A DNA stretch of 64,000 nt from Dimorphilus gyrociliatus (taxonomy: Eukaryota > Animalia > Annelida). Positions 4,404-50,052 of this stretch are shown here, piece after piece. The stretch covers positions 868,001-932,000 of the forward strand of contig CAJFCJ010000018.1 of assembly GCA_904063045.1 (NCBI GenBank), read 5' to 3'. Below the pieces are notes generated by a model. It searched no databases. It saw nothing but the letters and a program-made list of their open reading frames with translations, and was not told where the DNA came from. Made by a program: the position numbers and the translations under genes. How positions within the stretch are numbered: position 1 is the first letter of the stretch; the number at the start of each line of letters is the position of its first letter.

Positions 4404-4850
4404 CTTGAAAGAAGAATACTGATTTATTACATAAGAAATATTTCTCTAGTTAAATGTTGACCGTTTCTTTTAAGCACTGTGATTGGTTTGAGATTCAGCC
4501 ATATTTAATACATTGCTGCCATCTGTTTCATATGGGATAATTTCAATTTTTTTGTAGTATAGAGCTGACAATTTTTTGTTGATCAGTGTTATTTGGTCAT
4601 TTGATTGGAAATTGGGCTTGTGAACCATTGCCAGTTGCTTTTGATCCCCGATTTCTGACTACTTACGCTCTTTTTTAAATACACTGCTTTCTTATTTTTT
4701 TTGCACTAATTATGTACTGCATTTTATTGAAGAGTAAAGTCAGACTTATATTTTTATGCCTTTTTAGCTACTACTTGTGTATGATTGTTTTTCTTAAGTT
4801 CGTAATTGCATAATGTTTTTTTTTCGACCTTGAACTTGAAGGAGAACAAA

Positions 4851-5224
4851 ATGGCAGACTCGAAAGAAATGCCCCGTGTTGACATGAAAAAAGAATTCCC
4901 GAATTTAAATGAGACAGAGAAACATTTCGTCCGGAAAATAGAAAATATGAATCTTGAGCGAGCAGGTCGTCTCACAAAAATGAGAAGTCGTAACAAACTA
5001 ACTGGAGCTCTTATTGCCGGCGCTGTTTTGGGAATATGTATCCTTTTATCACTCAGCCCGATCGCTGTTTAACAGCGAATTTATATGCTTTCTATGTAAA
5101 AAAAAACTCTATTAGTATTAATACTTTTCCTTAATAATTTTAACTTATAGATTCATATACACTTTTGGCGGTTAAACAAGAAAAATTTTTAGATGATTTC
5201 GACAAAGTTCCGGAGGAAAACTAG
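4851..5224 (+). CDS. COA3: Cytochrome c oxidase assembly factor 3 (CCDC56)
   Basis: Exons 4851-5037 and 5151-5224 give ...RSRNKLTGALIAGAVLGIYSYTLLAVKQEKFLDDFD..., matching the COA3 TM and C-terminal motif. Confidence 0.9.
5038..5150 (+). other. U12-type (minor spliceosome) GT-AG intron in COA3
   Basis: 5' site GTATCCTTTT, branch TTCCTTAAT at 5127-5135, AG about 15 nt downstream; splicing restores the COA3 frame. Confidence 0.9.
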
Positions 5225-5314: not shown

Positions 5315-6736
5315 TTAAATTATTCCTTTGCTTCTCCAATTAAGACTATTTTCGTCATAATCTTCATCCGATTCTTCGCTGGAATCGTTAAGGTCGTTTT
5401 TGGCAGCTGTGGTACTTCTCTCTTTAGATTGTACTTGTTTTAATACTTCTTCTTTCTTTTTGTATAAATTGTCAACTTTGCCCCATAATTGTCTGATTTG
5501 AAGAGAACGTAAGTATATGTCAAAAAAATGTTTATCTTACGCACATTTCAGTATCAATTTCTTCAATATTTCTCAAGATTGTATTTTCTTCGTGCTCTTC
5601 ATCCATTAGATTTTCAGCTTTCTAGAAAGAAATTAATCTACTTTACGTTTAATATAGACTTTAATACACACATTTGTCTCGTCTTTTATAACTTTTTGAA
5701 ATATTTCCCACTCTTCGTCTATTTTGTTTTTGTATTCCACATTGCGTACCTACAATAAAGAGCATTAAACTTAATATTTAAAGTTTTAAAGCTTGGAAAG
5801 GAAAAGTACTTTAGCATCAATTTTAGGATCATCAAAAAATCCCTCCGGTATCTGTTCAGCAGCAGTGTTTGATATTGGGCCCTCCACTTCAGAATCTACC
5901 TTAGATGTTTGTGGTTTTGGTTCTTTGTCACCAGAATCGAAAAAATCTGTTTTATTTTATGTTTTGTTTAAAAATACAAGTATAGTATTTTTAAAACAAC
6001 TTAATTTTATATTATTACCACTAGGAAGAGAAGAAGACGGAATCTCTGTTGTAACTGTAGGAACTTTAGAGCCAGTTTTTAGAGGTGCATTTTTCAATAT
6101 CGATTTAGCATTTGTCTTCGACGAATTATCAAAAAAGTCGTCAGGTAATCTATATTATATATATATATATATATGTAAAAGTTAATTAATAATTAACTAT
6201 TTTCATGAGAGAGAATAACCTCGATTTTTTAGTTTTCGAATTATCTAAAAAAAAATCAAAAGTTATTCATAATATTCAGGTTTAGAATTACTTTACAAAC
6301 CATCCTTGATTTCTTCTTCCGTCTTTCTCTTCAATGTTTGAGAAATTGGCTTTTCTTGAACTAGCCGATTTGATTTCAGTAGTTCTACATTCTATATTTT
6401 AGTTTAATTAAACGTTATGTTTAAACTTTAATTTTTATTTACCTCTTTATGTCCTCGGCTTTTAAGGTGAGTATCCCAAAGAATTTCACTCCTTACTTGA
6501 GAATTACATACTACACATGTTAAATTTCCTAGGGCGTTATATGTATGATTAAGTTAAGGATAATAAACAGATAAAAGAGCGATAAAATGGAAAAAAAATC
6601 GCAATTGAGAAATCTACAACAAATTAAAAAAAGGATATTTTGCTAGTGGATGATTGATTTTATTCTTTGAAGCAGCTTTGTGCATTAGTCGTTTTAAATC
6701 ATCCTTTGCAAGAGATTTTGAAGCTTTTGAGGACAT
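5315..6736 (-). CDS. ZNF830: Zinc finger protein 830 (CCDC16)
   Basis: MSSKASKSLAKDDLKRLMHK...INHPLAKYNALGNLTCVVCNSQVRSEILWDTHLKSRGH (C2H2 finger), middle LPDDFFD/LPEGFFDDP motifs, C-terminus DYDENSLNWRSKGII*. Confidence 0.9.
6543..6638 (-). other. U12-type AT-AC intron in ZNF830
   Basis: Minus strand: GCA AA|ATATCCTTTT...TCCTTAAC(6560-6553)TTAATCATAC|A TAT AAC; removal gives in-frame ...LAKYNALG. Confidence 0.92.
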
Positions 6737-6884: not shown

Positions 6885-9800
6885 ATGGAGGCAGTTCCAA
6901 GATTGCCTATGATGTCTTTTGAATCAAAACAATGCTCAGACAGTGTAGAATTTACTCCAGTTTTGCGCTCGGTTTGTAATAAATTTTATTCTATTTGTAA
7001 TATACCACTGTAGAAACATCTAAATAACATATTTTTCTTGTATTTTTACGATTTGTAATTCCTGTCAGAGTCAAACGACGATGAATCATCTTGCATCTTA
7101 AATCAGTTAATAAAGTTTAAACTATTTACAGTATATTTTAAATCACTACGGGGAAAATCCGTCAAAATATGAAAAAGCATTGGAAGAACTAGAAAACTTA
7201 CGAACGGTAAGTTGTCAGGGAGCAATACAACTTTATCTGTATATTTTACTTTAAAAACTCAGACCGCAACCAAATGTTCAAAAGATTTAACAAGATGTAG
7301 TATATTAAAAAAATACTATGCTCAGTTACATATGCTTCATAATCGTTTTCCAATGGGAGAAGCAGACCCAGTGGCTGTTGCATTTACATGGTTTGTTGTG
7401 CTTTTTATTATGTATTCTATGTGCATTAATCTTGTACGTAGGGATGATGCTTTTGGAGGATCAACAGTCGTGCATGCCGATATTAAATTCGAACAAGCTT
7501 GTATTCTATATAACATTGGCTGTTTATACTCTAGCCTTGGTGCTTCAGATACTAGAAACACACAAGAAGTAAGGACCGAATTCGTTAACTTATATAATCT
7601 AATTATGTATTTATAACTATCAGAGCTTGAAAGCATCTTGCACTCATTTCCAAATAGCAGCTGGAGCCTTTGAAACTGTTAGAGACTCCTTTAATCCTTC
7701 ATACTCTTCGGATTTTGACAGCGACGTACTAACATTCCAGAGCAATTTGCTACTGGTAGGTCTACAACATTTAATATTTTCGTTATTCATTTTCAATGTT
7801 CCGTAGGCTCAAGCTCAAGAATGTATTTTAGAAAAGTCTATGTCGGAGAATAGGAAAAGTACTATCACTACAAAAATTGCCGCTCGTATTCGCCAATTTT
7901 ATACAGAATGCCAAAAAATCTTGGAGTTAAAACATACAGCAAAAATATTAGGGGCCAAAAAGCATAAGGTAATTAATAGATTATGGGCTAACATTCAAAC
8001 TTTTCAATATTTGTATATAAAAAGGAATGGAAAAAAAGGATAGATTTGAGAATTATTTATCATCATTGTTTGACATACTTTTATTCTGGTATGCAAGCAG
8101 AAGAAACAGAAAAGTGGGGAGAAAGGTTGATGTATTTTGAAGCAGCGTTGGAACAGATGCAATCCTGTTTGAAATTGGCGAAGGTAGAATTAATCCTTCA
8201 TTTTAATAATGTATAAGTTTATTAATGACTAAAAAAAATTTGGTATGTAGGATTCAATTCAAATGGAAGAAACTGTGCGGTTTGTTAACGATGTTGTTAC
8301 TGGGAAGTAAGTAAATGCCATTCATACAAATAAAGCAATTGTTTATTTAAATCTTTGGATATAAAGGTTCAATTCCGCTAAGAAAGATAATGATTTCGTT
8401 TATCATGCAAAAGTACCAAAACTTGAAGATTTTACACCTGTAGAAGGAGCTACATTAGTAAAAGGAATAATTTTTGATCATACTGATGTTGAAATATCTG
8501 GCCTTGACATCTTTAGGTATTAAATTTTTATTAGTAGCATAAATTAATCATGCAATTATATTATTATTTCATTAGAGAGTTAGTTCCATTGGAAGCTCAT
8601 GAAGCCTCTTCCATTTATAGTGAAGAGAAGGCCAAACTATTAAGAGTTATTGGAACAGAAGTTTCTGATGCTGACGAAGAGCTTACGTAAGACTATTTTA
8701 TAATTATTTGGTTGACTACTGAATTATTCATTTTTTTATTATTCTTCCTTTTTATAGACAACGAATGAATCAGTTAGCTTTTGATAAAGAATTTTTAAAT
8801 ATCGATAAGCAAGTATTGCCTGATTCGGTATTGGAGAAATGTGCTGCTATTAGCGCTATGCCTAATTCTACATCCGACTTACGTCAGTGTCTACATTGTG
8901 AGTAATTGAGATATGCTTTTAGACAATAACTTATTAACAAATCTATATATACAAATAAGCTTTATCTGGAGCTGCTTCGAAAATTGAAGAAAAAATTACA
9001 AAGATTCATAATATAATAGCAAAGGAGAAACGAAATGAAGATACATTTCAAAAAACTTTCGGTAAAAGGCAGGTTGATTCTCGCCTAATCGAGTTGGGAA
9101 ATAATGCAGAAGAAAGTGCTGAATTAGTAGACAAAGCAGCCCAAACTACACAGGTTCTTTGTCAAGCTATGGACGATCATATAGCTAATTTGAAATTGTT
9201 GTGTGATCCACAAGAATTAAATCGAAATTTACCAAATAGAAGTATATTGACTGGTATGTTAAAATTAGTCAATCGCTATTTTAAAGCGATTAATAAATTC
9301 AGTATGTTTATACGGTAATTATTACTTCTATAGAAAATGAAGAGGACGTTAAAATCATAAAACAAATGATAAAATTGATGGAAAAGATTGATGAAATGGT
9401 TAAACAAAGAAAATTATTAGAAACTTCATTGAGAGATGCAATCCATTCTGATGATATAACAAAAGTTATTGCTGGCAAAGGCGGAACCCAAGATCAAGAG
9501 GTAATTTAACCTTACTTTTAACTATGTTTTTAAAAAAATTAATGAATTATTCATCATCAGGAATACTTTAGGACAGAATTAAAAAAGCACGATGAAAACT
9601 TGAACCTATTAAGACAGAATATAGGCGCACAAACAAATATTTTGAAAGCATTGGCTGAATGTTATGTGAAATTTGCTCCAATTCGCAGAGAATTATCTGA
9701 AATTGACCAAAAGTAATAATAAAAAAATTTAACGTATTTTCATAGGCACAACTTTATATTTATTTTTTAGGCGAAATAAAAAAATTGAGTCCTTGATTGA

Positions 9801-37949: not shown

Positions 37950-40176
37950 ATGAGCGTCAAGATTGAGGACAAGGATAAAGTTCATCGTGGAAATGCCGAG
38001 GTTTGGAAGTGGATCAAACGAACTGAATCAGAAGCGTCATTGGCCGTTAATTTAGGTTAGAAAATATTCGTTCAATAAATTTGTGATGAATAATTCATTA
38101 AACTAATTTTGTTTAGGCGATGAATTTCAAGTTGGTCTGACTGATCTAGCCGAGGATAAGGAAATAGCAACTAAAGCAGTTGCTTTTGTTGTTAATGCAT
38201 CGAGAAAAGGGATTGTCAAACTTTGTTCTGAAGTTGGATCTATCATGAAAGAAAGGCAAAAGTAAGTTTGTTGCTTTTACAATTTTTCATTCATCGCTAT
38301 CCTCAGCTGATCTTAAATTTCATAAGATTGTAGAATTTAGTGGGTACTAATGTTGTTTTGTATGCAAAACAGCGTAAATCCATTCATTTAAGTTGTTCTT
38401 GAACACTCGGTTTTCTTTTCATTCACAAAAACTGTCAAAAGAGCCGTGAGAGTTTTATTGAAAAGAATCCTTTTTATTTATGAAGAGGGTAGTTGACAAA
38501 AAATGTTGCATAAGATACGACTTTACACCAAATGATTGCGCCAAGGAATGTGAAACTTGCGGTTTTAATGATAGATTTATAAGCTGGAGAAATGCCCAAT
38601 TACGTATGCACAGAAATTCGATCTGTAAACGCATTTATAATTTTGTTTTTGTTATTGGCTTTTTTTTGAATGTTCATATTTACACAGGTTTTTACACAAG
38701 TAAAACTAGTACGAATAAACTTGATATGCTCGTTTAGAGACGTTAAATTATTTTTTTTTCAGATTGGAAAAGAAAATACGATGTCTAAAAATACAAAACT
38801 CTTCCCTACGGCGAGTTCTAGACAATTCTGTTGCCTCAAGTGATTCTTCTAGTCCTGCCCCTCAAAGGTTTATATTTTCAATTGATTTTATGGTCATGTA
38901 GTTTATACAATCGTTATTCGCCTACGCAGTTGCCATACAGATTCAAGATCTAGCCTATGCTGTAATAGATCAGACAGCGGATTTCTTGTCGATTCTCCGT
39001 CTCCCTCGTCTTCATTTAACAGATCACATAGTGTTCCGTCTCCCGTTGACGACAAATCTGTCAGGCCTAATCTACTCACTGTTGAAAATGAGGAAAATCA
39101 TACCAGGGTACACAAAAAGTCATTACCGGAGATTGTATCTTCTCCCGACCAAAATGTTGTTCGAGTAAATGCTAGAAATTTATTAGAAGAAAATTTGGAG
39201 CTTAAGAAAATGTTACATAGAGCCAACCTCGAAATAGAACGCCTTAAAAAATTGTCGAGACGTCGACCATCTAATCAAGAAATCTTTTTCGAAGACGAGT
39301 GTCAGCGTTCTTCTGATTTGGATAGGTAAATAACAAATCTCATTAGGTTACTGTACACATTTTAACTTGTATCTACACCTTCTCCATTCAGTCCGAGAAG
39401 TGACAATAGCTTTGGGGCTGTAGCCAAGCCATTCTCAACAACATATCCCCTCCAACAAACTGGAGCAATATCGACCTGCATTTGCTCTAGTTGTGCTAAA
39501 TTGAAAAATAAGAGTAATAGCTCAATAAGGTAATAATAGATAAATTTGATAAAGTGTTTATTCTATAAGATTTTACCCCTATCATTGTACAGAGATGGAC
39601 CAGTAAAAGTCGGCCAAAGAGTTACACTCAAAGATCAAAGATGGGGCATAGTTAAATACGTTGGCCACTTAGAGGATACCGGTGAGCCAAATCTATTGTT
39701 TATTGGTGTTGAACTAAAAACCACTAGCGGAAAAAATGATGGCACGTTTAAAAATAAACGCTATTTTGATTGTGAACCTGGAACTGGAATATTTGTTTCT
39801 GTTAGCGACATTATTGAAGTAGGAGATGCGACCGCTCAAGCGATACCAATTATACGGCGCTATTCAGCAGACTATGATGATCCTACGGATAGTCCATTTA
39901 AGAATCCTTCTCGGAAGGGCTACTCATTACCAATGGAATCTTCAAAATCCCATCAATTAAAAGTTGAACCTAAGCCTTCGGAGAGCTCACTTAGATTATG
40001 TCAGAGCGATGGCTTAACAAGATCAAAGTCACCTGTTCCCGAAATGCATATTATTGATATGGACCTAAGGTAACTTGCATCTGAAAGTTATCCAATTAAA
40101 GATGTTTAACACTTAATTATGACAAAATTTTACTCAGAAATTCTTTAGAAATGTAGACAACTCTTATCACTATTAG
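37950..40176 (+). CDS. Uncharacterised coiled-coil + CAP-Gly domain protein
   Basis: Six in-phase exons; CAP-Gly VGQRVTLKDQRWGIVKYVG...FIGVEL...GKNDGTFKNKRYFDCEPGTGIFV; coiled coils LEKKIRCLKIQNSSLRR and LEENLELKKMLHRANLEIERLKK. Confidence 0.75.
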
Positions 40177-40996
40177 AAAATGACAATAGCAGTTTTTGCT
40201 TAATCTGATAAAAAATGAAATCAAATTAGATTTACGTTTAGTAAGGTTGTCTTCTATTCTGAAGGAAATTAAAAATCTGTGCTAAAAATTTGATTAACCA
40301 AACACGAATGTGATATTTCTCGCTGTGATCTTTTGTTATTTAATTTAGTTTTAGAATCTCACAATTTTTTTTTTGCTATCTGTTCTGTTCTACAAGAAAA
40401 CAAATGTTGAAACTCAAATAATAAAATTGTTATAATAAAAAACGAATTAAAAGTTTTGGTTTATTTTATTTTTCTTTTAGTTAAGTAAACTGGTATCTTC
40501 CAAGAATTCTTTTTTTATAAAGAATGTATTTCCTTATATAAATATTTCGATTGTTAGGCTGTTAAAATAAGATTGTAACAAACATAAGATAGAAGAAGAA
40601 AAAGATTGTTAATGGTCAAACATTTCTATCTTTTAACGAGATAGACCGTAAATCTATATATCATTCAAGATTTTCAATACTTCGGTAAATAGTCTAACGA
40701 ATTTTCAAGTGTTCAATAAAAAATCTATAGTACAGCCAAACAAAGCGATTCAGACTACTTTATTTTATCTATAAGTCTTACATTTTTCATTATTTCCTAT
40801 TTATATCAAGTATGTTTTTTTTTTTATTAAAAATGGTAGCCAAATTGCTGTTGATTTACTTTTAAGCCTATATCATAAATGTGATATATGTATAAGGGTA
40901 TATTGATCGTGTTTATTTATCTACTTAACGAGTTGTCTACTAATTAGAATATTGGTTCATTTATAATGTTTTATAATCAGTAGAAATGTTCACGTA

Positions 40997-41011
40997 AGGT
41001 CATTGTGACCT
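40997..41011. promoter_or_regulatory. Perfect IR3 nuclear-receptor palindrome (ERE consensus)
   Basis: AGGTCA-TTG-TGACCT, flanked to give AAGGTCATTGTGACCTT. Confidence 0.55.
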
Positions 41012-41415
41012 TAAAATTTTTTTTAAGTTGGCGTTCATCTTAAGTAATCTTAAAATTTTTCTTTCAGCCTAGCTATTTACTATTAGTCAGGCTGAAGCAA
41101 CCTGTCTTATAACAATTTGTATTATTTAGAACAAGTTGTCGTCAAAATTGAAGAAGTATGTGAGAATTCTTTATAGGACAAAAACATGACAAGTGTGTGG
41201 TTTTTGCTTTTTGAAATTGTTTTGCTATTTTATTATGAATAATATTTTGATGAATGATTGAACAATTGGGTTTAAAATCGTAAGATAAAGGATGATTTTT
41301 TCCTATCATATTCTTTATAATATAGAATTCTTAAGAAAATCGTTGTCCAAAAAATAAGTCAACCATTGAGCACATTAAAGGAGTTACACAATTTGAAAAA
41401 CAATTTGAATATTAG

Positions 41416-41533
41416 CCAATAAGAAACCAAGAAACCAATTAATTTAAAAGTTGATTGGATAAAAATGGAAAAAATACTTTTTTATGAGCGCGAGAAGAGT
41501 ATAAAAGGGGGTCTAAATTTCTTACAAATTAGT
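41416..41533 (+). promoter_or_regulatory. Focused Pol II promoter: CCAAT x3, TATA, Inr
   Basis: CCAAT 41416 and 41435, ATTGG 41454, TATAAAA 41500-41506, TTAGT Inr with A at 41531 (31 nt from the TATA T). Confidence 0.65.
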
Positions 41534-41757
41534 GCTGGTAGAGGATCGTAGCCTTCCGCGCAATTTTCGGTATGGACAACAACTTCAGAAGATTAGCCAC
41601 CTTCTCAAAAGGCCTGTTGGGGTCGACGCCGATACAGCAAGACCACTTGACGCAACCAACATGGACATCAAGATACAGTTTTTTCAAGTGACTTCCTACG
41701 ATACCTCATCCTCCGTACCAGCACTCATCGTCCTACCTTAATCAATCTGCACGCGCG
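41531..41757 (+). other. GC-rich, self-complementary transcribed unit: structured 5' leader exon with uORFs, or a small ncRNA/smORF gene
   Basis: ~50% GC island in AT-rich flanks; 41531-41551 complementary to 41696-41725; ATG ORFs 41572-41691 (39 aa) and 41661-41741 (26 aa); possible donor GTAATC at 41758 and AATAAA at 41769. Confidence 0.45.
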
Positions 41758-42069
41758 GTAATCGTAATAAATAACCTTCGGAGTGGTTTCAAAAAAAGCA
41801 AAAATGAATACGGGAACAAAAACAAACAAGGCCAATATTTTTTCATTATCATTATAAGAGCCTTTAACATTTGCCATAAACTTATTAGTTCTTCAATTGT
41901 GTACTTAACTATGTATTTTGTGAATATTTCTGTCAGTTGTTATTTAAATTAAATACAAAAAAAGCATAAAAAAATAAATAATTTAAAATTCAAGTTTGTT
42001 GTAATTTTTAATTTTTTAAAAGAGTTGAATTTTTATTTCTTTAAGCCAAATCAACTTGTTGAATAAATA

Positions 42070-45000
42070 ATGTGGCGTGAATTTCGCATAATTTTTAAGC
42101 TTAAATTAAAGGAAAGACAACGAAGTTGGAAGAAAGGCACAAATTATATTTTAATTACGTCGGAAATAATTGTCCTTTTTCTGTTTTTGTAAGGAAAAAC
42201 TGCAATAGGAATGGATGTTATCTATTTTAATGCTGCTGTTTTTTTTTTCCATAATCGTTTAGTTTAAGAGTTAGATTTGGAGATAATTGGTCAGAAACTA
42301 GAGTTGAGAAAGTTGTAGACGAAGCTATTGAAACATCGTGCTATAGGGCACAATCTTTTGGTTCCTCAAAGCATGTTATATTTTATTCACCGTTGAGTAA
42401 TTCTATAACAAAGTCGATGTCTAATTTAAAATCTCGCTTAGAAGAGTTTGAATGCTTGAATAAAAATTCCTTATTAATCAAGGGTCTCATTAGCTCTAGC
42501 GAGGTAACGAAGAAATTGCAAACTGATGGGAATAGTGAATATCAGACGATTGCCGCAATAACCTTCCCTGATAACTACTCACTTCAAGAAAACTTTCCCG
42601 ACCATATTGTTTATGAACTTCGCCTACCAACAGATCCACTAGGACGTTATGGAGAAAGAAACTGGAATAACAGTTTTATAACACTTCATTCAAAATTTAT
42701 ATCGAGTATCCGTGAGTTATTAAAGAAACGGCTATGGAACGTTTCTTTGCCGAAAGTTAAAAAAATACCTTTTCCTTCAGATAAACAGCAAACATTCGTT
42801 AACTACTTTGCGGAACTGCAAAGATTAATCGATATTTCTCTAATAGAAACAATTTCGGGTAGAAAAAATGCTACAAAAGTTGAATATGAGCTAAAAGTTT
42901 AACAATAGTTATTTTCGTAGCTAAATTCTTAATATTAAAGCTTTTTCCCTTTTTGTTTCTCTCTTCAAGATAACTCAACTTAACAATGGAACAGAGCAGA
43001 ATGATCTGAAATACTTTTATATAATAAGAATTACCTATTATGTAATATTCATATTTTTTATCCTCAAAGAGTATGGAGATAAATATGATGTTACGGAATC
43101 CTTATGTCCACTCTTTATAAGAAGTGGACCATTTTATATCTTTATGGAACATTTCGCCTGCATATTTATCAATTTTGTATCATTATTTTTAACTTTCTTT
43201 TCCGAGATAGTTTTCAATTATGTTTTGAATGATGGAAACTGGTTAATTTTTCATTGTCTCTTCCTATCAGCAATTGTAATGTTTTGCAAGATAGTCGCTT
43301 TGTATTACGTTCAATCTTGTTGTTCATCTGTAATCATTCAATCATCATTTGACCTTTACTGGGCTGGATTTTTCTCATTTTTTTTTACGATTCCATTCCT
43401 TCTTCAATGTTATCCTAATCTAGTATATCTATCTTGTTTTCTATTTCCAAATCAAAATTGGATAATATACAACTCAAAATACTATCAATTCTTATTATTC
43501 AGTAACTATAAATATGCATAAGGAGTTAAGCTCTACGCTGAATATTCATTTCATTTTTTTCGTAGGTAAACTAGACGCAACATTATGGAAAGGTCCATAC
43601 TTCTCTCTAAGTCCTATCATAGTTGTTAATATCATCTTTGGAATTATTATAGTATTGATTATAATATTTAAAAAACCACCCAAAGGTTTAGGAGTGAACC
43701 CTCTGCGTTTATTTCAGGTTTTAAAAGATTTATTATGTATATATAATAATAATAATAAAAAACATATAGAAATCAGCATGGATAAGAGTATTTAAATCAG
43801 TTAATATCTTCTCAAGAAGAAGGATTAAGGTTGATCCTCATAGAAAATTTCTATCCAGTGGTTCATTTTTTAATGAAACAAGAAAGAAAGTAGAAAAATG
43901 CCGAGTTGAATTAATTAACATCAGCCACCAGGATGAAAGCAACGGTACATTAACAAAACATTTGGTTTGTAAACATTTTTATATAAAATAAATCGTTAAC
44001 CTTTAGAGACTTTTTAATTTTAGAACGATGTTAGTTGTATATTTTATCCTAATTTAATTACTTGCATATTAAGCGATTCACCGACTAGTCGATCTCATTT
44101 ATTATTAATTATTTACGGGGTTGTTGCTCACACTTCGGGTACTTGTTTAATTGGAGATTTTCAAATGGGAAGTATAGAAGCCAAAGAATTAGTTGGCTGG
44201 GCTCCTACTTCTCTTAGATCTTGGGAGAAAATGACTATAAAAGAGGCAACTGTTGTATGGTTAACTTGTAGGAATTTAGCTCCATCCAAAATTAATGATA
44301 AAAGACTCGGATTTTATTTCAGATTATTTAAGTAAATAAGATAATCCATTCAACGAGAAATTAACAATCATAAATTCTATTATTTTAGCTTCTTTCCCGA
44401 TGATTATGTAGGATCGTTATCTCCGTCGAGAAGGAGGATGTTACAAACTATGATGGCCTTTTGTACCGATTGTAAAGTAATCTGTTTAGAACAGCCTCAT
44501 ACAAGTTTGACTGTTAGCGATCAGGAAGATTTAACAACAATATTGGATTATTTATCAAAGGGAAGAACAATATTAATTAGCATGGAACCAGATAGCTTAA
44601 TAGAAGAGATAGCTCATAAAGTATTATTATTATATAGGGGAAAAGTTCTTTTCTATGATTCTGTCTATAATTTAAAAATGATGTTGGCTAAATATTTATG
44701 CGTATACATTCATAAGGAAGGAGAGGATTTATTAATTGAAGCCCCTCTTGACGATATAATCCAGGTTAAAATATTCTTTCCTGAAGAAGAAAAAAACACT
44801 GTTTAATATCATCTTATAATACAGACAGATTCCCTAACCGATATAAATACTTCAGTTGAACAAGAACAACCTTTAATAGCTAATTTAACAAAAATTCACG
44901 ATAATATGAATATTATTGGCTACTCTTTAATGTTTTCAGAAAGTAATTTTAAAGAATAAGTTTATTACAAATAAATATTTGTGTTTTTTTTAAAAAAACA

Positions 45001-47923
45001 AATCTTTCAGATGGAAGACAATACATTCCAACATTTTGGAAGATATTTGAAGAGAAATATAAAAATTGTCATATAGAAGTTACTACTGTTAGCTTGGAAC
45101 AGTATTTTACATAGTAATATATACTTTCTTTTACAAAAGTTAACTGTTTTAAATATACCAATAATTTATCAATACTTTTATATTAGTTTATCTTATTGGG
45201 GAACAGAAGTGAATCCATATGTTTCCCTAAGAGAGTTTAAAAGAGATGAAAATGAATTTACTGTAATATTATTTCATTAATTATTGATAATCAATCAATT
45301 TTATATTATCTTTAAAAATATAAAGCTTTTGGGCAAATACGATAAAAATACTAAAAGAAAAATGACATTATTCAAGAAAACTGTTATAAAAATTGGTAGA
45401 ATGAATAACTTAGCTTACAGAAAACCGTTTAAATTGTTATTAATATTCTTTCTATTACCAATTTGTATGGTTATAAGACTAATACCTTTATATAAAGATG
45501 CTAATAAAGTTTCTAGTATTCAATCAATTGTCTATAATATAGATACTTTAAAACTAGGTTGGTTTACTATTTTTTTCCATTTATTGTAACTATATGAACT
45601 TTTAAATAATATATAACAGAATCTTCTATTATACCTCTCTTTTGCTATTCAAACTGTACAAATGGCATTTTAAATAAGACAGCTGAAATTGCCATTGAAT
45701 TATTGAATGAAAATGGTTTATTTTTTGACAATCCAGTATTAGAAAAAGAGATTGATAGTAATATAACTAAAAGTAATGAATCTGTTGTAAGGAAATGCTT
45801 AGACAAAGATTTATATTCAGACTTTAGTTTAACACTTCAAAAAGGTTTTAACAATGACAATACTTTTAAATTCTCATTTCATTATTGCTACCAGTTTTTA
45901 CATGGTAAAAATATTGGAATAAATATTATATCTAACATCCTATTAAGGTTGTTAAGTAAAGATAACAAAAGTATAACAACTATCAATAATCCTTTACCTT
46001 CAAAACAAGTTCAATTTAGATATAATAGCGGCTATATTTTTGATGGATATGTCAATGCCTTTTTCTATTCCGTTGGATTCTCTTCAATATTTTTTATTGT
46101 TAAACGTCCAACTCGTAATTTTTTAAATTTCATCTGAAATTTTAACTTATTCGTTCACTTTTGTCTATTTTTTACAATCAGATATCCTTTCATTGATGGG
46201 TGGTATTTTTATGAGTAATAGAATTGCGGCTGTTGTATTGATACCGAATGTTAGAACGCCTAAATACGAAGCTTTAAATTCACTTATCGCATGGGAAGGA
46301 TTTCTTGAAGCAGTCTCTTGTTTTCCTACTCTTTTCTTTTGTACAGGACTTAAGAAACTTAAATTGAAAATTGAAGTTAGAAGGCAACTTTTGTTAATTT
46401 GGTTATTGTTACCTATTGGGGCTATCCACTCTATTCATCTTATAAGTAGACGTGTTGCCTATCAACTCATATATGTATTGAAATTTATCAGTCCTGTTGC
46501 ATTGGTCCATAATAATTTTGCCTTTTCTAGTCAATTAATAAGAGATATTCTCAATCAATCAGTGGAATGGGAGAGTGCAATCTTAGTTTACAGAGAAATG
46601 ATAATCTCTGATTTGTTCATCTCTCTCTATCAATCTGCGATTTGTTTTATAATATATTTGGTAGTAATTGATTGGGCAATAATAAAAATGAAACTATCAA
46701 AGCTTGGACCAGCACGATTCAACAGTGCTCAATTGTTTAGACGACGCCGTTGGGTCTTGAAAAATTCTGCAGTTCAATTATTGGGAGTAATAGATCAACA
46801 GAAATATTACGACAGTGACTCTGTCCGCCCATTCTTAGATACTGCTGTAAAGTGGGAAAAATTAAAGATTTACTCAAAATTTAATTGGGCAACTGTAAAA
46901 TTAGGCAATGTTTCCATAAATACCACTCCGAGGGTAGACTTGAATTTGAAAGAGGGTGAGAGCATCCTGATCTTCGGTGTTGGAGAAAATTCGGGAAAAT
47001 ATGAACTTTTTGAGACCATAGTTGGTCAACGACGGCTGGCGGGCGAGTCTATTGTCAGAGTTTTCCGAAAGTCAATGTACGATATGGGATTTGATATCTT
47101 TTCATCGATTGGCTATTTACCAGACTCTTCGGAAGGTTGGAATATGGATAAACTATTAACAACTGCTGAAGCTCTATACTGGACTGCAAGACTTCGAAAT
47201 GTTAAAGCAAATGAGACAGATTTCTATTTGTTAAGCCTAATAAATATATTTGGTATATCCAACTGTTTTCATACTTTACTTGTTGAACTTCCAATTGAAC
47301 AAATGCGTCTTGTTCAGATAGCCTGTGCTATTGTCGGTTTACCCAAGATAATTGTTCTAAATGAACCTTTTCTGGGTTTAGGATTAGGAGCCAAGCAAAG
47401 GGTTTTAAGAATTCTCACAGATCTTAAAGAATTAAATCATACAATCATCATAGGATCAACCAGCACTGATGAAGCTGAACAACTTTGCGACCGACTCATA
47501 GTTATGTACGAAGGGACAAATTTAATAACCGGTAAAATAAGGGACGTAAGAAATACTTTTTTACCTGGTCACCACATAACTATTCGATTTAGTACTGAAA
47601 AGTATATTTCTCACATAGCGAAACTGTGGAGTTATCCTTTTGAAGTTATTCGAAAGGGTAAGAATTTGATAGAGCTATATGCTGATAATACGATTCAATT
47701 ATCAGAGATATATGAAAATGTTCAAGTAGGTATTCAGAGCTTCCCGGCAGTTGATATTTATCACTTAGTAACCAGGTATTTAATATCCTATTCAATCGAC
47801 AATTGTTAACTATTACCTTCCTTCAGACCAAGTTTAAGCATGGTAATAGAAGCAGCCGTTGCAATCCTTAGTCAAAATGCAACTAATCAAAATCAGGAAA
47901 TAGAAACTATTCAAAGACGATAA
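42070..47923 (+). CDS. Highly divergent full-length ABCA-like protein with degenerate nucleotide-binding domains
   Basis: ABCA-like N-terminus (MWREFRIIFKLKLKERQR; IFYSPLSNSITK), TMD-NBD-TMD-NBD layout; NBD2 IGYLPD...LLTTAEALYWTARLRNV...DEAEQLCDRLIVMYEG; in-phase splicing where checked and a 538-codon open 3' frame. Confidence 0.8.
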
Positions 47924-48028
47924 TTTTTTGATTTTTCACAAGTTTTTGTTTTTTTATGATATTTTTCATCGATTTATTGTGAAAAAAGTTCCTTATTTAT
48001 ACTGTTTTATTTGATGCGTTATTTTCTC

Positions 48029-49143
48029 TTATTCGTACCCTCTGTAGAAAGATTCACGTTAGTAAATAAGAATAGTACTATAACACAACGACTTACCGAA
48101 CCATCGGTGCAATTGACCAATCATCATTGACCCTCTTGTCAGATAGTATTCTACATCCATCCTTTGTGACAATAGCCACTTGGTACTATAGTTATAGATT
48201 GACCGCTATTATTTCTAAACATGAAAAGCGTTAAAAACAGTATACCTTGTTTAGAGATCTGGCATCTCTGTAATACAATACACGAAAGCATTTTTCCATC
48301 AAATCCAATGCTTGTTGCTCAGTCAAAGGTGGCTTGTGATCAGTAGCTTCTCTCAATAAAGGCTAAAAATGAAAAGCTTATATTCGGCTAATCTCAAAAA
48401 GTTAACTATTTACCAAAGCTATATAGGCACCATAACCGGTCCCGACGGCAGTAGATTCATATGCTGTTCCAATCTTATCAACATATCCGAGAAAACTAAA
48501 ATAAAAATAAATACTACTTCATAATTCTTCAATGAGTACCAAAACTTACGGTTCGTTGTTTTCTAATCCTCCTATAATTGTAGTGTTCCACAATGGATCA
48601 AAGTTGGAACGTTTGCTGTACATGAGCATCCTGAGCCAACTAAATAAACTCTTTGGGGTTAAATTAAAACCATCATCCAAGCATTCTTCAGTAACACTTT
48701 AAAAAAGTAATAAATATCAAAATGAAGCAAAGATGGTTAAATAATAATATCTTACACTTTCTGCTCGATTATTCCCTTAAGATGTTGATAATCTGCGTAA
48801 TCTCCACTGGCCCCCAAAATTGTTGTATCGTTCACTTTCATAACTCGCTCACAACCCCTAAATCTGGCGAGAGAGCCGTATGAACCGAGGTTATCCGCAC
48901 CGATTATCACACCACCGTCAAATTTTACTCCCAAGACAGACGTTCCTGTTACAGTTGGATATCTGAAAAAAAGTTGTGTCACCGATGAGCGATATTACAG
49001 AATATTTGTATTCATCCAAATTTATTAAAGAAGAATTGACAAACTCACAGTGTTCTATTCTTCGCACTTATATTGACGGATACTGTCTTCTGAGGAAAAT
49101 CATGATAGTCCGCTTTGTTAAGGTTTCCTTGAAAATAATTCAT
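48029..49143 (-). CDS. PSMB4: Proteasome subunit beta type-4
   Basis: [66 protein letters not shown]; ends [11 protein letters not shown]. Confidence 0.96.
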
Positions 49144-50052
49144 TTCTTGACTGTTTAGACCGACTAACACGAAACGAAAATTGTTCTATGTATGGACATC
49201 GAAGTAATAGCGGGAACCTCTAGTAGTCCATCATTCTCCAGTTCACTTAAAAGAGTCAACAAATATTATCTTTTAAAGAAAAATATTTCTAGTAAAATGA
49301 AATAAACTTCAATTACTCTTCACAAATGTCTAACCGAAAAAGAACAAACTCACTGCGCTGGTTTAATGACTGAAAATAAGATTGTAAAATCACATCAAGC
49401 TAATGTGTAATCTATATTTTCTTAATTAACTATAATCACAAGATAATGTAAAAAAAAACAAAGAATTATGTACGAAAAGTAAGCGAGATTGTCAATTGTC
49501 ACGAAAGAGAATCGTGCGGGGAAAAGAATTTAATGATATAATGTTAATCTGAAGAGCGTTTACCTGTTAAATTCCTGAAATTGACTCCAGTAAATGTACA
49601 AAATCTCATTTAAAACTACTTATTAGATTTTTTTTCGAACTAATTGTAAATCTTGTTATAAGGATCTATATAGATATTTTAACAAAATTTAATATACATA
49701 AATATAAATATAGTCGTCGAGCATGTATTTGGTATATAATATCTTTAATGCTGAATGTGTCTGTTATAGGCTGTAATTTGTTAATAAATCATAAATTAGT
49801 TCAGTATCTGACAGAAAACACCTTTAACTCTGTTAGTTTTAATGACAAAAGTGACATCTTCAGGACTTTTACATCTACTTTATTGTCAGAAAAAATATTC
49901 GCCGAGATCACAATTTCATGTCTAATAAACTTCCGGTAGGGAAATAACAGAAATTCTATAGCCTCTATGGCAAAGAATTAATACAAACCTGAACATAAAC
50001 AAACTAACGCATCAAATTTTTTACTTGAAGAGAAATTTGAAAGAAAATTGAA

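What the first reader, a model, noticed from the sequence alone, without database searches (positions are those of the whole stretch)
42070..47923. Full-length ABCA-like protein with both ATPase cassettes apparently dead
Seen in NBD1: Walker A replaced by SDSPTSRSH (~44070), signature LSPS, Walker B VICLEQP (D->E, catalytic E->Q), H-loop SME. Seen in NBD2: GVGENSGKY (~46975), signature LPIE, Walker B IIVLNEP (D->N), H-loop GST. Yet the splice sites are in phase and the frames long and open. Known: ABCA needs GxxGxGK[ST], LSGG, hhhhDE and the switch His; asymmetric ABCs lose only one site. Inference: a pseudo-ATPase ABCA acting as a lipid sensor, receptor or scaffold. With the upstream ERE, promoter and structured leader, it could form a steroid-linked regulatory module.
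Basis: partly seen in the sequence, partly recalled or inferred. Interest (0 to 1): 0.75.

Follow-up and report, generated by a model that had tools for sequence, protein, structure and literature searches.

The report
Conserved ABCA protein with dead ATPase sites
This small marine worm keeps, expresses and has long conserved a full-length lipid-pump-type (ABCA) gene in which every residue needed to burn ATP has been lost in both engine domains, so the protein must now do something other than ATP-driven pumping.

Summary
Window 42070-47923 (+) holds an intact 14-exon (perhaps 15-exon) ABCA-type gene: 1676 codons, no internal stop, all introns GT..AG and 51-74 nt.

- **Dead motifs.** Against 97 canonical ABCA relatives, both nucleotide-binding domains score 0 of 6 canonical elements (Walker A, Q-loop, signature, Walker B Asp-Glu, D-loop, switch His). 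Only the NBD2 Walker A Lys and catalytic Glu remain.
- **Not a pseudogene.** A syntenic orthologue in a related species keeps all exons open and carries the same dead motifs. Pooled pN is 0.157 against a saturated pS of 0.735 (omega about 0.06). The two dead domains are among the best conserved parts (81-84% amino-acid identity).
- **Expression.** RNA-derived contigs confirm six sense splice junctions.
- **Origin.** A tree shows a very long stem followed by short tips.
- **Reading.** This is a selected pseudo-ATPase. What it does without ATP is inferred, not shown.
- **Upstream element.** The estrogen-response-type palindrome is real and conserved in the orthologue. The "structured leader" region does not align between the two species.
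- **Other loci.** First readers flagged four other "dead ABCA" loci and one ABCC4-type locus on other DNA of this genome; I did not check them. Milder doubly degenerate ABCA-like proteins exist in a mite, a wasp, a fly, a snail and a protist.

The parts
42070..42188 (+). Exon 1: start codon and TM1 with an ABCA-like N-terminus
   Evidence: ATG at 42070 and GT donor at 42189. 79% aa identity to the orthologue, no gaps.
42263..42896 (+). Exon 2: short extracellular domain 1. A probable extra in-frame intron lies at 42712-42780.
   Evidence: Open frame, 46-59% aa identity to the orthologue, with indels. A GTGAGT..CAG 69-nt segment is homologous to an obligatory 55-nt intron in L001 at 6380-6434.
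42970..43501 (+). Exon 3: TMD1 helices, the most constrained membrane part
   Evidence: 79% aa identity overall and 90% mean column identity in the protein alignment. pN 0.109, pS 0.695. Hydrophobic stretches are present. No sequence hit in PDB or Pfam.
43566..43717 (+). Exon 4: TM6
   Evidence: The junction 43501>43566 is seen in RNA contigs. It holds the strongest hydrophobic stretch.
43770..43964 (+). Exon 5: linker and the start of NBD1 (first strand, A-loop region)
   Evidence: The frame and acceptor are shared with the orthologue. The junction to exon 6 was not seen in RNA.
44024..44331 (+). Exon 6: N-terminal half of NBD1, with Walker A remnant SDSPTSRSH (44072-44098) and Q-loop Gln replaced by Thr
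   Evidence: Aligns to ABCA4 residues 971-1044. 84% aa identity to the orthologue, with the motif identical.
44389..44764 (+). Exon 7: C-terminal half of NBD1, with signature LSPS, Walker B VICLEQP, D-loop TSLT and H-loop SMEP
   Evidence: Aligns to ABCA1 residues 1032-1136, whole-sequence E=6e-8. 82% aa identity, pN 0.105. Both flanking junctions are seen in RNA.
44825..45262 (+). Exons 8-10 (44825-44942, 45011-45113, 45187-45262): R1 regulatory domain and linker
   Evidence: The junctions 44764>44825 and 44942>45011 are seen in RNA. Exon 9 is 94% identical in aa.
45326..46114 (+). Exons 11-12 (45326-45557, 45620-46114): TM7, short extracellular domain 2, start of TM8
   Evidence: The frames are open and the splice phases fit. 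aa identity is 68% for exon 11 and 41% for exon 12, with indels. There is no RNA coverage over 45206-45597.
46182..47775 (+). Exon 13: TMD2, NBD2 and R2. Motifs: GVGENSGKY (46976-47002), LPIEQ (47288-47302), IIVLNEP (47348-47368), LGLG (47372-47383), GSTST (47453-47467).
   Evidence: ABCA4 NBD2 E=3.6e-25. AF2 model pLDDT 72.8 overall, about 85-95 over the best-modelled part of NBD2; Foldseek top hits are ABCA4/1/7/3. 1594 nt without a single gap against the orthologue. The NBD2 core is 81% identical in aa.
47827..47923 (+). Exon 14: C-terminal tail and stop codon
   Evidence: The junction 47775>47827 is seen in RNA. The tail matches the ABCA end-of-R2 pattern. The orthologue has the same exon.
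40996..41012 (.). Perfect 17-nt palindrome AAGGTCAttgTGACCTT (estrogen-response-element type, IR3), 1.06 kb upstream of the ATG
   Evidence: It is the only zero-mismatch match in the 64-kb window. The same palindrome sits at L001 4837-4853, 0.9 kb upstream of the orthologous ATG, and is the only zero-mismatch match in that locus. The flanking DNA does not align.
44781..47564 (-). Spliced antisense RNA overlapping exons 8-13. Minus-strand introns: 45997>44781, 46283>46230, 46412>46358, 46923>46845, 47279>47224, 47564>47423.
   Evidence: CT..AC joints in RNA contigs, which are GT..AG on the minus strand. No open frame exceeds 49 codons. Only 2 of the 5 testable introns keep both splice sites in the orthologue.

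Best explanation
The locus is a real, expressed, protein-coding gene descended from an ABCA-type full ABC transporter (TMD1-NBD1-R1-TMD2-NBD2-R2, about 1650-1676 aa, with short extracellular domains). Both composite ATP sites have lost every element needed to bind Mg-ATP productively and to hydrolyse it.

- NBD1 has no P-loop glycines, and its Walker A Lys is Arg. Its Q-loop Gln, signature SGG, Walker B Asp, catalytic Glu, D-loop Asp and switch His are all replaced.
- NBD2 keeps only the Walker A Lys and the catalytic Glu.

The loss happened before the split from a related species. It followed or accompanied a burst of sequence change. Since then the whole protein, and the dead NBDs in particular, has been held by purifying selection.

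Shown here: the gene is intact, it is of ABCA origin, the motifs are lost, the protein is under constraint, and sense splicing occurs.

Inferred: the NBDs survive as structural or interaction modules that clamp the cytoplasmic side. The protein would then work without an ATP cycle. The most likely form is a static, apo-like lipid-binding or scaffolding membrane protein, or a regulatory partner of another protein. A conserved ER-type palindrome upstream may place it under a nuclear receptor.
For: - Intact model: 14 exons, no stop in 1676 codons of a 30%-GC sequence, all introns GT..AG.
- ABCA homology: both NBD halves and the TMD2-NBD2-R2 exon match ABCA structures. The predicted fold of exon 13 matches ABCA4/1/7/3 over about 540 columns.
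- Motif loss: 0/6 canonical elements in each NBD, against mostly 6/6 in 150 relatives. Replaced positions include ones that are 95-100% invariant among relatives.
- Orthologue: locus L001 is syntenic over 21.6 kb. All 14 exons are found in open frames and the dead motifs are nearly letter-identical.
- Selection: pooled pN 0.157 against pS 0.735, Fisher p about 1e-206. Exons show 68% nt identity and 1.8% gap columns; introns show 42% and 26%. The NBD1 exons are 84% and 82% identical in aa and the NBD2 core is 81%, higher than TMD2 (55%) or the extracellular domains (41-59%). The gene's dN of 0.176 lies inside the neighbour-gene range of 0.014-0.235.
- History: the stem branch is about 4.5-5 changes per site and the tips are 0.21-0.23.
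- Expression: sense GT..AG junctions are seen in RNA-derived contigs at six introns.
Against: - No biochemical evidence exists. NBD2 keeps its Walker A Lys and catalytic Glu, so some nucleotide binding cannot be excluded from sequence alone.
- Only two species are available, and synonymous sites are saturated. Omega is therefore an upper-bound style estimate, not a precise value.
- The exon 5 to exon 6 junction was not seen in RNA. The two isoforms observed there (intron 5 retained, exon 6 skipped) both break the frame.
- RNA depth over the 3' half is confounded by a spliced antisense RNA.
- TMD1 has no detectable similarity to any solved ABCA, and its model was unusable.
- NBD1 could not be folded whole, because it is split over exons and the joined step was left out.
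Confidence: 0.8

Rival explanations
1. The locus is a decaying unitary pseudogene of an ABCA transporter. Its catalytic motifs rotted because the gene is no longer used.
For: Every catalytic motif is lost. Pfam no longer recognises the NBDs above threshold. Two frame-breaking splice isoforms are seen.
Against: - There is no stop in 1676 codons of AT-rich sequence, and all splice sites and phases are intact in two species.
- pN/pS is about 0.2 with pS saturated.
- The exons are almost free of indels while the introns are full of them.
- The dead motifs themselves are conserved.
- Spliced sense RNA exists.
Confidence: 0.02
2. The protein is a non-hydrolytic nucleotide sensor. Site 2 (NBD2 Walker A Lys and Glu) would still bind ATP or ADP without turnover, and nucleotide occupancy would gate a conformational switch, as at the degenerate site of CFTR or SUR.
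For: NBD2 retains the GK dipeptide and the catalytic Glu. Degenerate sites of ABCC proteins are known to hold ATP for minutes (PMC7756269).
Against: - The NBD2 P-loop has a one-residue insertion, and Tyr or Asn replaces the Mg-coordinating Ser/Thr.
- The Walker B Asp is Asn, and the Q-loop Gln, the H-loop His and the A-loop aromatic residue are gone.
- The partner signature in NBD1 is LSPS.
- Known degenerate sites keep an intact Walker A. This one does not.
Confidence: 0.12
3. The protein-coding conservation is a by-product, and the functional product of the locus is the spliced antisense RNA or the regulatory DNA.
For: A multi-intron antisense RNA covers exons 8-13. The contigs that carry its joints are at least as deep as those that carry the sense joints.
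Against: - Conservation is codon-structured on the + strand (pN far below pS).
- It extends over the 5' half, where no antisense RNA is seen.
- The antisense exons have no open frame above 49 codons.
- Only 2 of 5 antisense introns keep both splice sites in the orthologue.
- The antisense RNA is most simply read-through from the convergent PSMB4-like gene. That origin is inferred, not shown.
Confidence: 0.03

Closest known systems
Vertebrate ABCA lipid transporters (ABCA4, ABCA1, ABCA7, ABCA3)
   Same: The domain order is the same. NBD1, NBD2 and the R domains align. The predicted fold of TMD2-NBD2-R2 matches them best. The short extracellular domains resemble ABCA3-sized proteins.
   Different: All catalytic motifs of both NBDs are replaced. 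Identity is only about 16-21% in the C-terminal half. Pfam ABC_tran scores below its cut-off and ABC2_membrane_3 is not detected. TMD1 is unrecognisable by sequence.
ABC proteins with one degenerate nucleotide-binding site (CFTR/ABCC7, SUR, MRP1, TAP1/2, TM287/288, Pdr5, ABCG5/G8)
   Same: Non-consensus residues appear in the Walker B Glu, the H-loop and the signature, and selection tolerates them. The degenerate site takes on a structural or regulatory role (PMC7756269).
   Different: Those proteins always keep one fully competent site. Their degenerate site still has an intact Walker A and binds ATP. Here both sites are degenerate and the Walker A motifs themselves are destroyed.
Doubly degenerate ABCA-like proteins in databases: Dinothrombium RWS09651.1, Trichogramma KAL7306042.1, Teleopsis XP_037933948.1, Littorina XP_070208976.1, and a Rhodelphis transcript
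   Same: They are full-length ABCA-like proteins in which the signature and H-loop, and sometimes the Q-loop or Walker B Glu, are non-canonical in both NBDs.
   Different: They mostly keep GxxxxGK[ST] and the Walker B Asp-Glu, scoring 1-4 of 6 per NBD. Two similarly degenerate unnamed hits (P0007, P0009) are still recognised by Pfam; Pfam was not checked for the named proteins. Those included in the tree do not group with this gene. As far as I found, none has been studied.
Pseudoenzymes in general (pseudokinases, pseudo-GTPases, pseudo-ATPases)
   Same: A catalytic fold is kept under purifying selection after catalytic residues are lost. The pattern is a long stem followed by constrained tips.
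   Different: I found no described example in which a whole two-engine membrane transporter has become a pseudoenzyme. That is absence in one held library, not proof.

Membership tests
ABCA subfamily of ABC transporters | Full-transporter order TMD1-NBD1-TMD2-NBD2, with an extracellular domain after TM1 and after TM7 | tested here: met
   The exon order gives an N-terminal TM, ECD1, a hydrophobic block, NBD1, R1, TM7, ECD2, a hydrophobic block, NBD2 and R2. The C-terminal half is confirmed by fold. TMD1 rests on hydropathy only.
ABCA subfamily of ABC transporters | Best sequence and structure matches are ABCA members rather than other ABC subfamilies | tested here: met
   The top 13 PDB sequence hits are ABCA4/3/1/7. 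Foldseek's top hits are ABCA4/1/7/3. The hits of the exhaustive search whose source names I looked up are annotated ABCA-like.
ABCA subfamily of ABC transporters | NBDs recognised by Pfam ABC_tran above the gathering score | tested here: not met
   NBD2 scores 16.5 bits against a cut-off of 25. NBD1 has no hit. The orthologue scores 17.2 bits.
ABCA subfamily of ABC transporters | Catalytic motifs present: Walker A GxxGxGK[ST], Q-loop Gln, signature LSGG, Walker B hhhhDE, D-loop Asp, switch His | tested here: not met
   0/6 in NBD1 and 0/6 in NBD2, in both species. By descent it is an ABCA. By catalytic definition it is not an ABC ATPase.
ABCA subfamily of ABC transporters | ATP-dependent lipid translocation | not testable with these tools
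   This needs purified protein and ATPase and flippase assays.
Pseudoenzyme (pseudo-ATPase) | Catalytic residues lost while the fold is retained | tested here: met
   Motif loss is shown. The NBD2 fold is modelled at a pLDDT of about 85-95 over its best-modelled part and matches solved NBDs. The NBD1 fold is inferred only from alignment to ABCA4 and ABCA1.
Pseudoenzyme (pseudo-ATPase) | Purifying selection after the loss, including on the dead domain | tested here: met
   pN 0.10-0.11 in both NBDs against pS above 0.74. The motif residues are identical or conservative between the species.
Pseudoenzyme (pseudo-ATPase) | Expressed as a spliced mRNA or protein | tested here: inconclusive
   Six sense junctions are seen in RNA-derived contigs of one run. 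However, the exon 5 to 6 junction is unseen, no full-length transcript is available, and there are no protein data.
Nuclear-receptor (ER-type) target gene | Palindromic AGGTCAnnnTGACCT element near the promoter, conserved between species | tested here: met
   Zero-mismatch elements sit at syntenic positions in both species. Each is the only perfect match in its sequence. By base composition, the expected count in the 1.45-kb orthologous spacer is about 3e-5 (my calculation).
Nuclear-receptor (ER-type) target gene | A receptor with an ER-type DNA-binding domain binds the element and changes transcription | not testable with these tools
   Earlier scan notes report an ER gene in this genome, which I did not check. 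Binding and regulation need ChIP or reporter assays.

The most novel reading that the evidence does not exclude
A complete two-engine ABC transporter has been converted into an ATP-independent membrane protein. The two dead NBDs would form a permanent cytoplasmic clamp, and the conserved TMD1 would provide a lipid or sterol-binding groove. Transcription would be driven by an ER-type nuclear receptor through the conserved upstream palindrome. Together with the other 'dead' ABCA and ABCC loci flagged in this genome, and the milder cases in arthropods, a mollusc and a protist, it would define an unrecognised, recurrent class of pseudo-transporters.
Probability: 0.3. Interest if true: 0.8.

Novelty: new variant of a known kind. 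Interest (0 to 1): 0.62.

Why it matters
ABC transporters are the textbook case of ATP-driven membrane machines. Accepted asymmetric members always keep one working site.

A full-length ABCA that has lost both sites completely, yet is kept by strong selection with its dead engines as the best-conserved parts, poses a question. What does the ABC scaffold do when it cannot cycle?

It offers a natural "apo-locked" ABCA for structural and lipid-binding studies. It also warns annotators on two counts:
- Domain-based pipelines miss it, because Pfam scores fall below threshold.
- "ABCA-like" labels in several animal genomes may hide non-pumps.

The conserved ER-type element gives a concrete, testable regulatory link in an annelid.

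Tried and rejected
- **Pfam scans.** I scanned all exon translations. Only ABC_tran appeared, below its cut-off, and only for NBD2.
- **TMD1 profile.** A two-species profile of the TMD1 exon found nothing in PDB. The protein-atlas feature search gave no usable hit.
- **TMD1 fold.** AlphaFold2 on the TMD1 exon with two sequences gave pLDDT 45.6, so I did not use it.
- **Word-index protein search.** It added no relative beyond P0001.
- **Cluster look-up.** P0001 has no name and is the only member of its cluster.
- **Rfam.** A scan over 40000-49500 found nothing.
- **Tree.** I asked whether this gene belongs with other doubly degenerate ABCA-like proteins. It does not, though long branches make placement unsafe.
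- **P0007 and P0009.** I checked whether these unnamed degenerate ABCAs come from the same study as the orthologue. They come from other runs.
- **Literature.** Searches for a described ABC or ABCA with two dead sites found only single-site cases.
- **Pseudogene reading.** Rejected on the selection data.
- **Antisense-gene reading.** Rejected on frame structure.
- **Findings index.** A look-up by sequence was blank.
- **Organism.** The name Dimorphilus gyrociliatus comes from earlier scan notes only. I did not verify it, and I could not name the species behind L001 (Logan assembly of SRR23372228).

Full report
**What is in the sequence**

The window is AT-rich (about 30% GC near the locus) and has short spliceosomal introns. 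Earlier notes of this scan name the genome as the annelid Dimorphilus gyrociliatus. I did not verify that.

Between 42070 and 47923 on the + strand, open frames in alternating phases can be joined by GT..AG introns of 51-74 nt into 14 exons. They total 5031 nt, which is 1676 codons plus a stop, with no internal stop codon. The exons are:

| Exon | Coordinates | Exon | Coordinates |
|---|---|---|---|
| 1 | 42070-42188 | 8 | 44825-44942 |
| 2 | 42263-42896 | 9 | 45011-45113 |
| 3 | 42970-43501 | 10 | 45187-45262 |
| 4 | 43566-43717 | 11 | 45326-45557 |
| 5 | 43770-43964 | 12 | 45620-46114 |
| 6 | 44024-44331 | 13 | 46182-47775 |
| 7 | 44389-44764 | 14 | 47827-47923 |

Exon 2 probably contains one more intron, at 42712-42780. 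It is in frame, 69 nt long and bounded by GTGAGT..CAG. The homologous 55-nt segment of the orthologue is out of frame and must be spliced. With that intron removed the protein would be 1653 residues.

**It is ABCA-derived**

- The long exon 13 hits NBD2 of human ABCA4 at E=3.6e-25, followed by ABCA3, ABCA1 and ABCA7.
- The two NBD1 exons align to NBD1 of ABCA4 (residues 971-1044) and ABCA1 (residues 1032-1136).
- An AlphaFold2 model of exon 13 was built with 35 aligned sequences. Its mean pLDDT is 72.8, and about 85-95 over the best-modelled part of NBD2.
- Foldseek matches that model best to ABCA4, ABCA1, ABCA7 and ABCA3, over about 540 columns covering TMD2, NBD2 and R2.
- Pfam barely sees the gene. 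ABC_tran scores 16.5 bits for NBD2 against a cut-off of 25, and there is nothing for NBD1 or for either membrane domain.

**The motifs are dead in both cassettes**

I aligned the NBD pieces to 97 canonical full-length hits, then to all 150 hits with an HMM.

| Element | NBD1 | NBD2 |
|---|---|---|
| Walker A | G.NGAGK.T becomes S.SPTSR.H | GVgENSGKY: Lys kept, one-residue insertion, Mg-binding Ser/Thr replaced |
| Q-loop Gln | Thr | Asp |
| Signature | LSGG becomes LSPS | SGG becomes PIE |
| Walker B Asp | Glu | Asn |
| Catalytic Glu | Gln | kept |
| D-loop Asp | Thr | Gly |
| Switch His | Glu | Thr |

The K-x-aromatic A-loop segment of NBD2 is also missing.

Each ATP site of an ABC dimer combines the Walker A, Walker B and H-loop of one NBD with the signature of the other. 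This is established ABC knowledge, reviewed in PMC7756269. Both composite sites here are therefore degenerate in all their parts. The gene scores 0/6 in each NBD, while most relatives score 6/6.

**It is not a pseudogene**

An exhaustive HMMER search of 1.84 billion representatives with exon 13 found one close relative, P0001, at 68% identity. Every other hit was 32% identical or less, most of them 22-29%. The word-index search added nothing.

P0001 lies on a 29.5-kb contig assembled from SRR23372228. The locus, L001, is syntenic with the window over 21.6 kb. All 14 exons are found there in open frames.

The dead motifs in the orthologue are the same or nearly so:
- SDSPTSRSH, LSPSRRR, VICLEQP and ILISMEP are identical.
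- The NBD2 motifs read GVGENSGKN, LPLEQ, IIILNEP and GSTTT.

The contrast between exons and introns is sharp:

| | nt identity | gap columns |
|---|---|---|
| Exons | 68% | 1.8%, nearly all in the two extracellular-domain exons |
| Introns | 42% | 26% |

Nei-Gojobori counts over the gap-free blocks give pN 0.157 and pS 0.735. Synonymous sites are saturated. Omega is about 0.06, and Fisher p is about 1e-206.

Amino-acid identity to the orthologue by region:

| Region | aa identity |
|---|---|
| R1 (exon 9) | 94% |
| NBD1 exons | 84% and 82% |
| NBD2 core | 81% |
| TMD1 exon | 79% |
| TMD2 | 55% |
| Extracellular domains | 41-59% |

The gene's dN of 0.176 falls inside the range of its syntenic neighbours, 0.014-0.235. 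In a maximum-likelihood tree of C-terminal halves, the two species sit together on a stem of about 4.5-5 changes per site. Their tips are only 0.21-0.23. That pattern is a burst of change followed by constraint.

**Expression**

Only one public run holds the stretch. Its contigs are 99% or more identical to the window and skip introns, so it behaves as RNA.

Sense GT..AG junctions were seen at six introns:
- 43501>43566
- 44331>44389
- 44764>44825
- 44942>45011
- 46114>46182
- 47775>47827

Two caveats apply:
- The exon 5 to 6 junction (43964>44024) was not seen. Instead, one contig runs through intron 5 and one joint skips exon 6 (43964>44389). Both break the frame. Contigs drop rare variants, so this is not evidence of absence, and the 84% conservation of exon 6 in frame argues that it is translated.
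- Six CT..AC joints lie inside exons 8-13. On the minus strand these are GT..AG introns of 54-142 nt and one of 1217 nt. A spliced antisense RNA therefore overlaps the 3' half. It has no open frame above 49 codons, and only 2 of the 5 testable introns keep both splice sites in the orthologue.

I read the antisense RNA as non-coding. It is plausibly read-through from the convergent PSMB4-like gene at about 48.0-49.0 kb, but that origin is inferred. The antisense RNA also means that RNA depth over the 3' half cannot be credited to the sense mRNA.

**Upstream element**

AAGGTCAttgTGACCTT at 40996-41012 is the only zero-mismatch match in the window. The orthologue has AAGGTCAtgaTGACCTT at 4837-4853, the only perfect match in that locus. 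It sits at a similar distance from the upstream gene's conserved end (565 vs 541 nt) and from the ATG (about 1.06 vs 0.9 kb).

The surrounding 1.5 kb does not align. By base composition I estimate about 3e-5 chance matches in the orthologous spacer.

Earlier scan notes report an ER-type receptor gene in this genome (unchecked). So a conserved nuclear-receptor site is likely, but its target gene and its ligand are untested. The 41500-42070 'structured leader' does not align between the species and has no Rfam match.

**Mechanism**

Shown:
- ABCA descent.
- Complete loss of the catalytic apparatus at both sites.
- Purifying selection concentrated on the dead NBDs, R1 and TMD1.
- Sense splicing.

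Inferred:
- The protein cannot run an ATP cycle.
- The NBDs and R domains persist as a cytoplasmic clamp or as interaction surfaces.
- The membrane part, probably fixed in one conformation, binds or presents lipid, or regulates a partner.

A residual non-hydrolytic nucleotide-binding role for NBD2 is the main rival, at about 0.1.

**Comparison and novelty**

Known degenerate ABC proteins keep one competent site. In human full-length members the degenerate site is always site 1, and it retains its Walker A (PMC7756269). My literature searches found no described ABC transporter with two dead sites.

The databases, however, hold full-length ABCA-like proteins with milder degeneration of both NBDs:
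- a mite (RWS09651.1)
- Trichogramma (KAL7306042.1)
- Teleopsis (XP_037933948.1)
- Littorina (XP_070208976.1)
- Rhodelphis

Those included in the tree do not group with this gene. First readers of this scan also flagged four other 'dead ABCA' loci and one ABCC4-type locus elsewhere in this genome. I did not check them.

I therefore class this as a new, extreme variant of a known kind, not a categorically new system.

**Left out**

By the operators' binding note I searched and folded exon by exon, by reference only. The joined full-length protein was neither searched nor folded. NBD1 is split over exons 5-7 and so could not be modelled as a domain.

Noticed in passing
window 40996-41012; L001 4837-4853: A perfect 17-nt ER-type palindrome (AAGGTCAnnnTGACCTT) is conserved at the syntenic intergenic position in both species. 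It stands as an island in otherwise unalignable DNA.
   Followed up: partly
window 44781-47564, minus strand: A multi-intron antisense RNA overlaps exons 8-13 of the ABCA-like gene: six minus-strand GT..AG introns and no ORF above 49 codons. The contigs that carry its joints are at least as deep as those that carry the sense joints. It is possibly read-through from the convergent PSMB4-like gene.
   Followed up: partly
window 43964>44389 joint; contig over 43935-44331: Two frame-breaking isoforms appear around the Walker-A exon: one skips exon 6 and one retains intron 5. The productive 43964>44024 junction was not seen in the one available run.
   Followed up: partly
window 42712-42780; L001 6380-6434: A candidate in-frame 69-nt intron lies inside exon 2. 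Its homologue in the related species is 55 nt and must be spliced. The segment could be an exonised or optional intron.
   Followed up: partly
window ~48000-49000, minus strand: A proteasome beta-subunit gene, recalled from memory as PSMB4-like, is convergent with the ABCA-like gene. One exon is 94% identical in aa to the related species.
   Followed up: no
proteins P0004, P0007, P0009, P0022, P0023, P0037, P0039, P0041: Full-length ABCA-like proteins from a mite, a parasitoid wasp, a stalk-eyed fly, a periwinkle, a protist and unnamed transcriptomes have non-canonical signature and H-loop motifs in both NBDs. Some also lack the catalytic Glu. The named ones are annotated as ordinary ABCA1- or ABCA3-like or as a hypothetical protein.
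   Followed up: partly
window 45558-45619 vs L001 ~9378-9440: The intron between exons 11 and 12 in the window has no counterpart in the related species, where the TM7-ECD2-TM8 region is one continuous 294-codon open frame. This is an intron gain or loss inside the fast-evolving ECD2.
   Followed up: no
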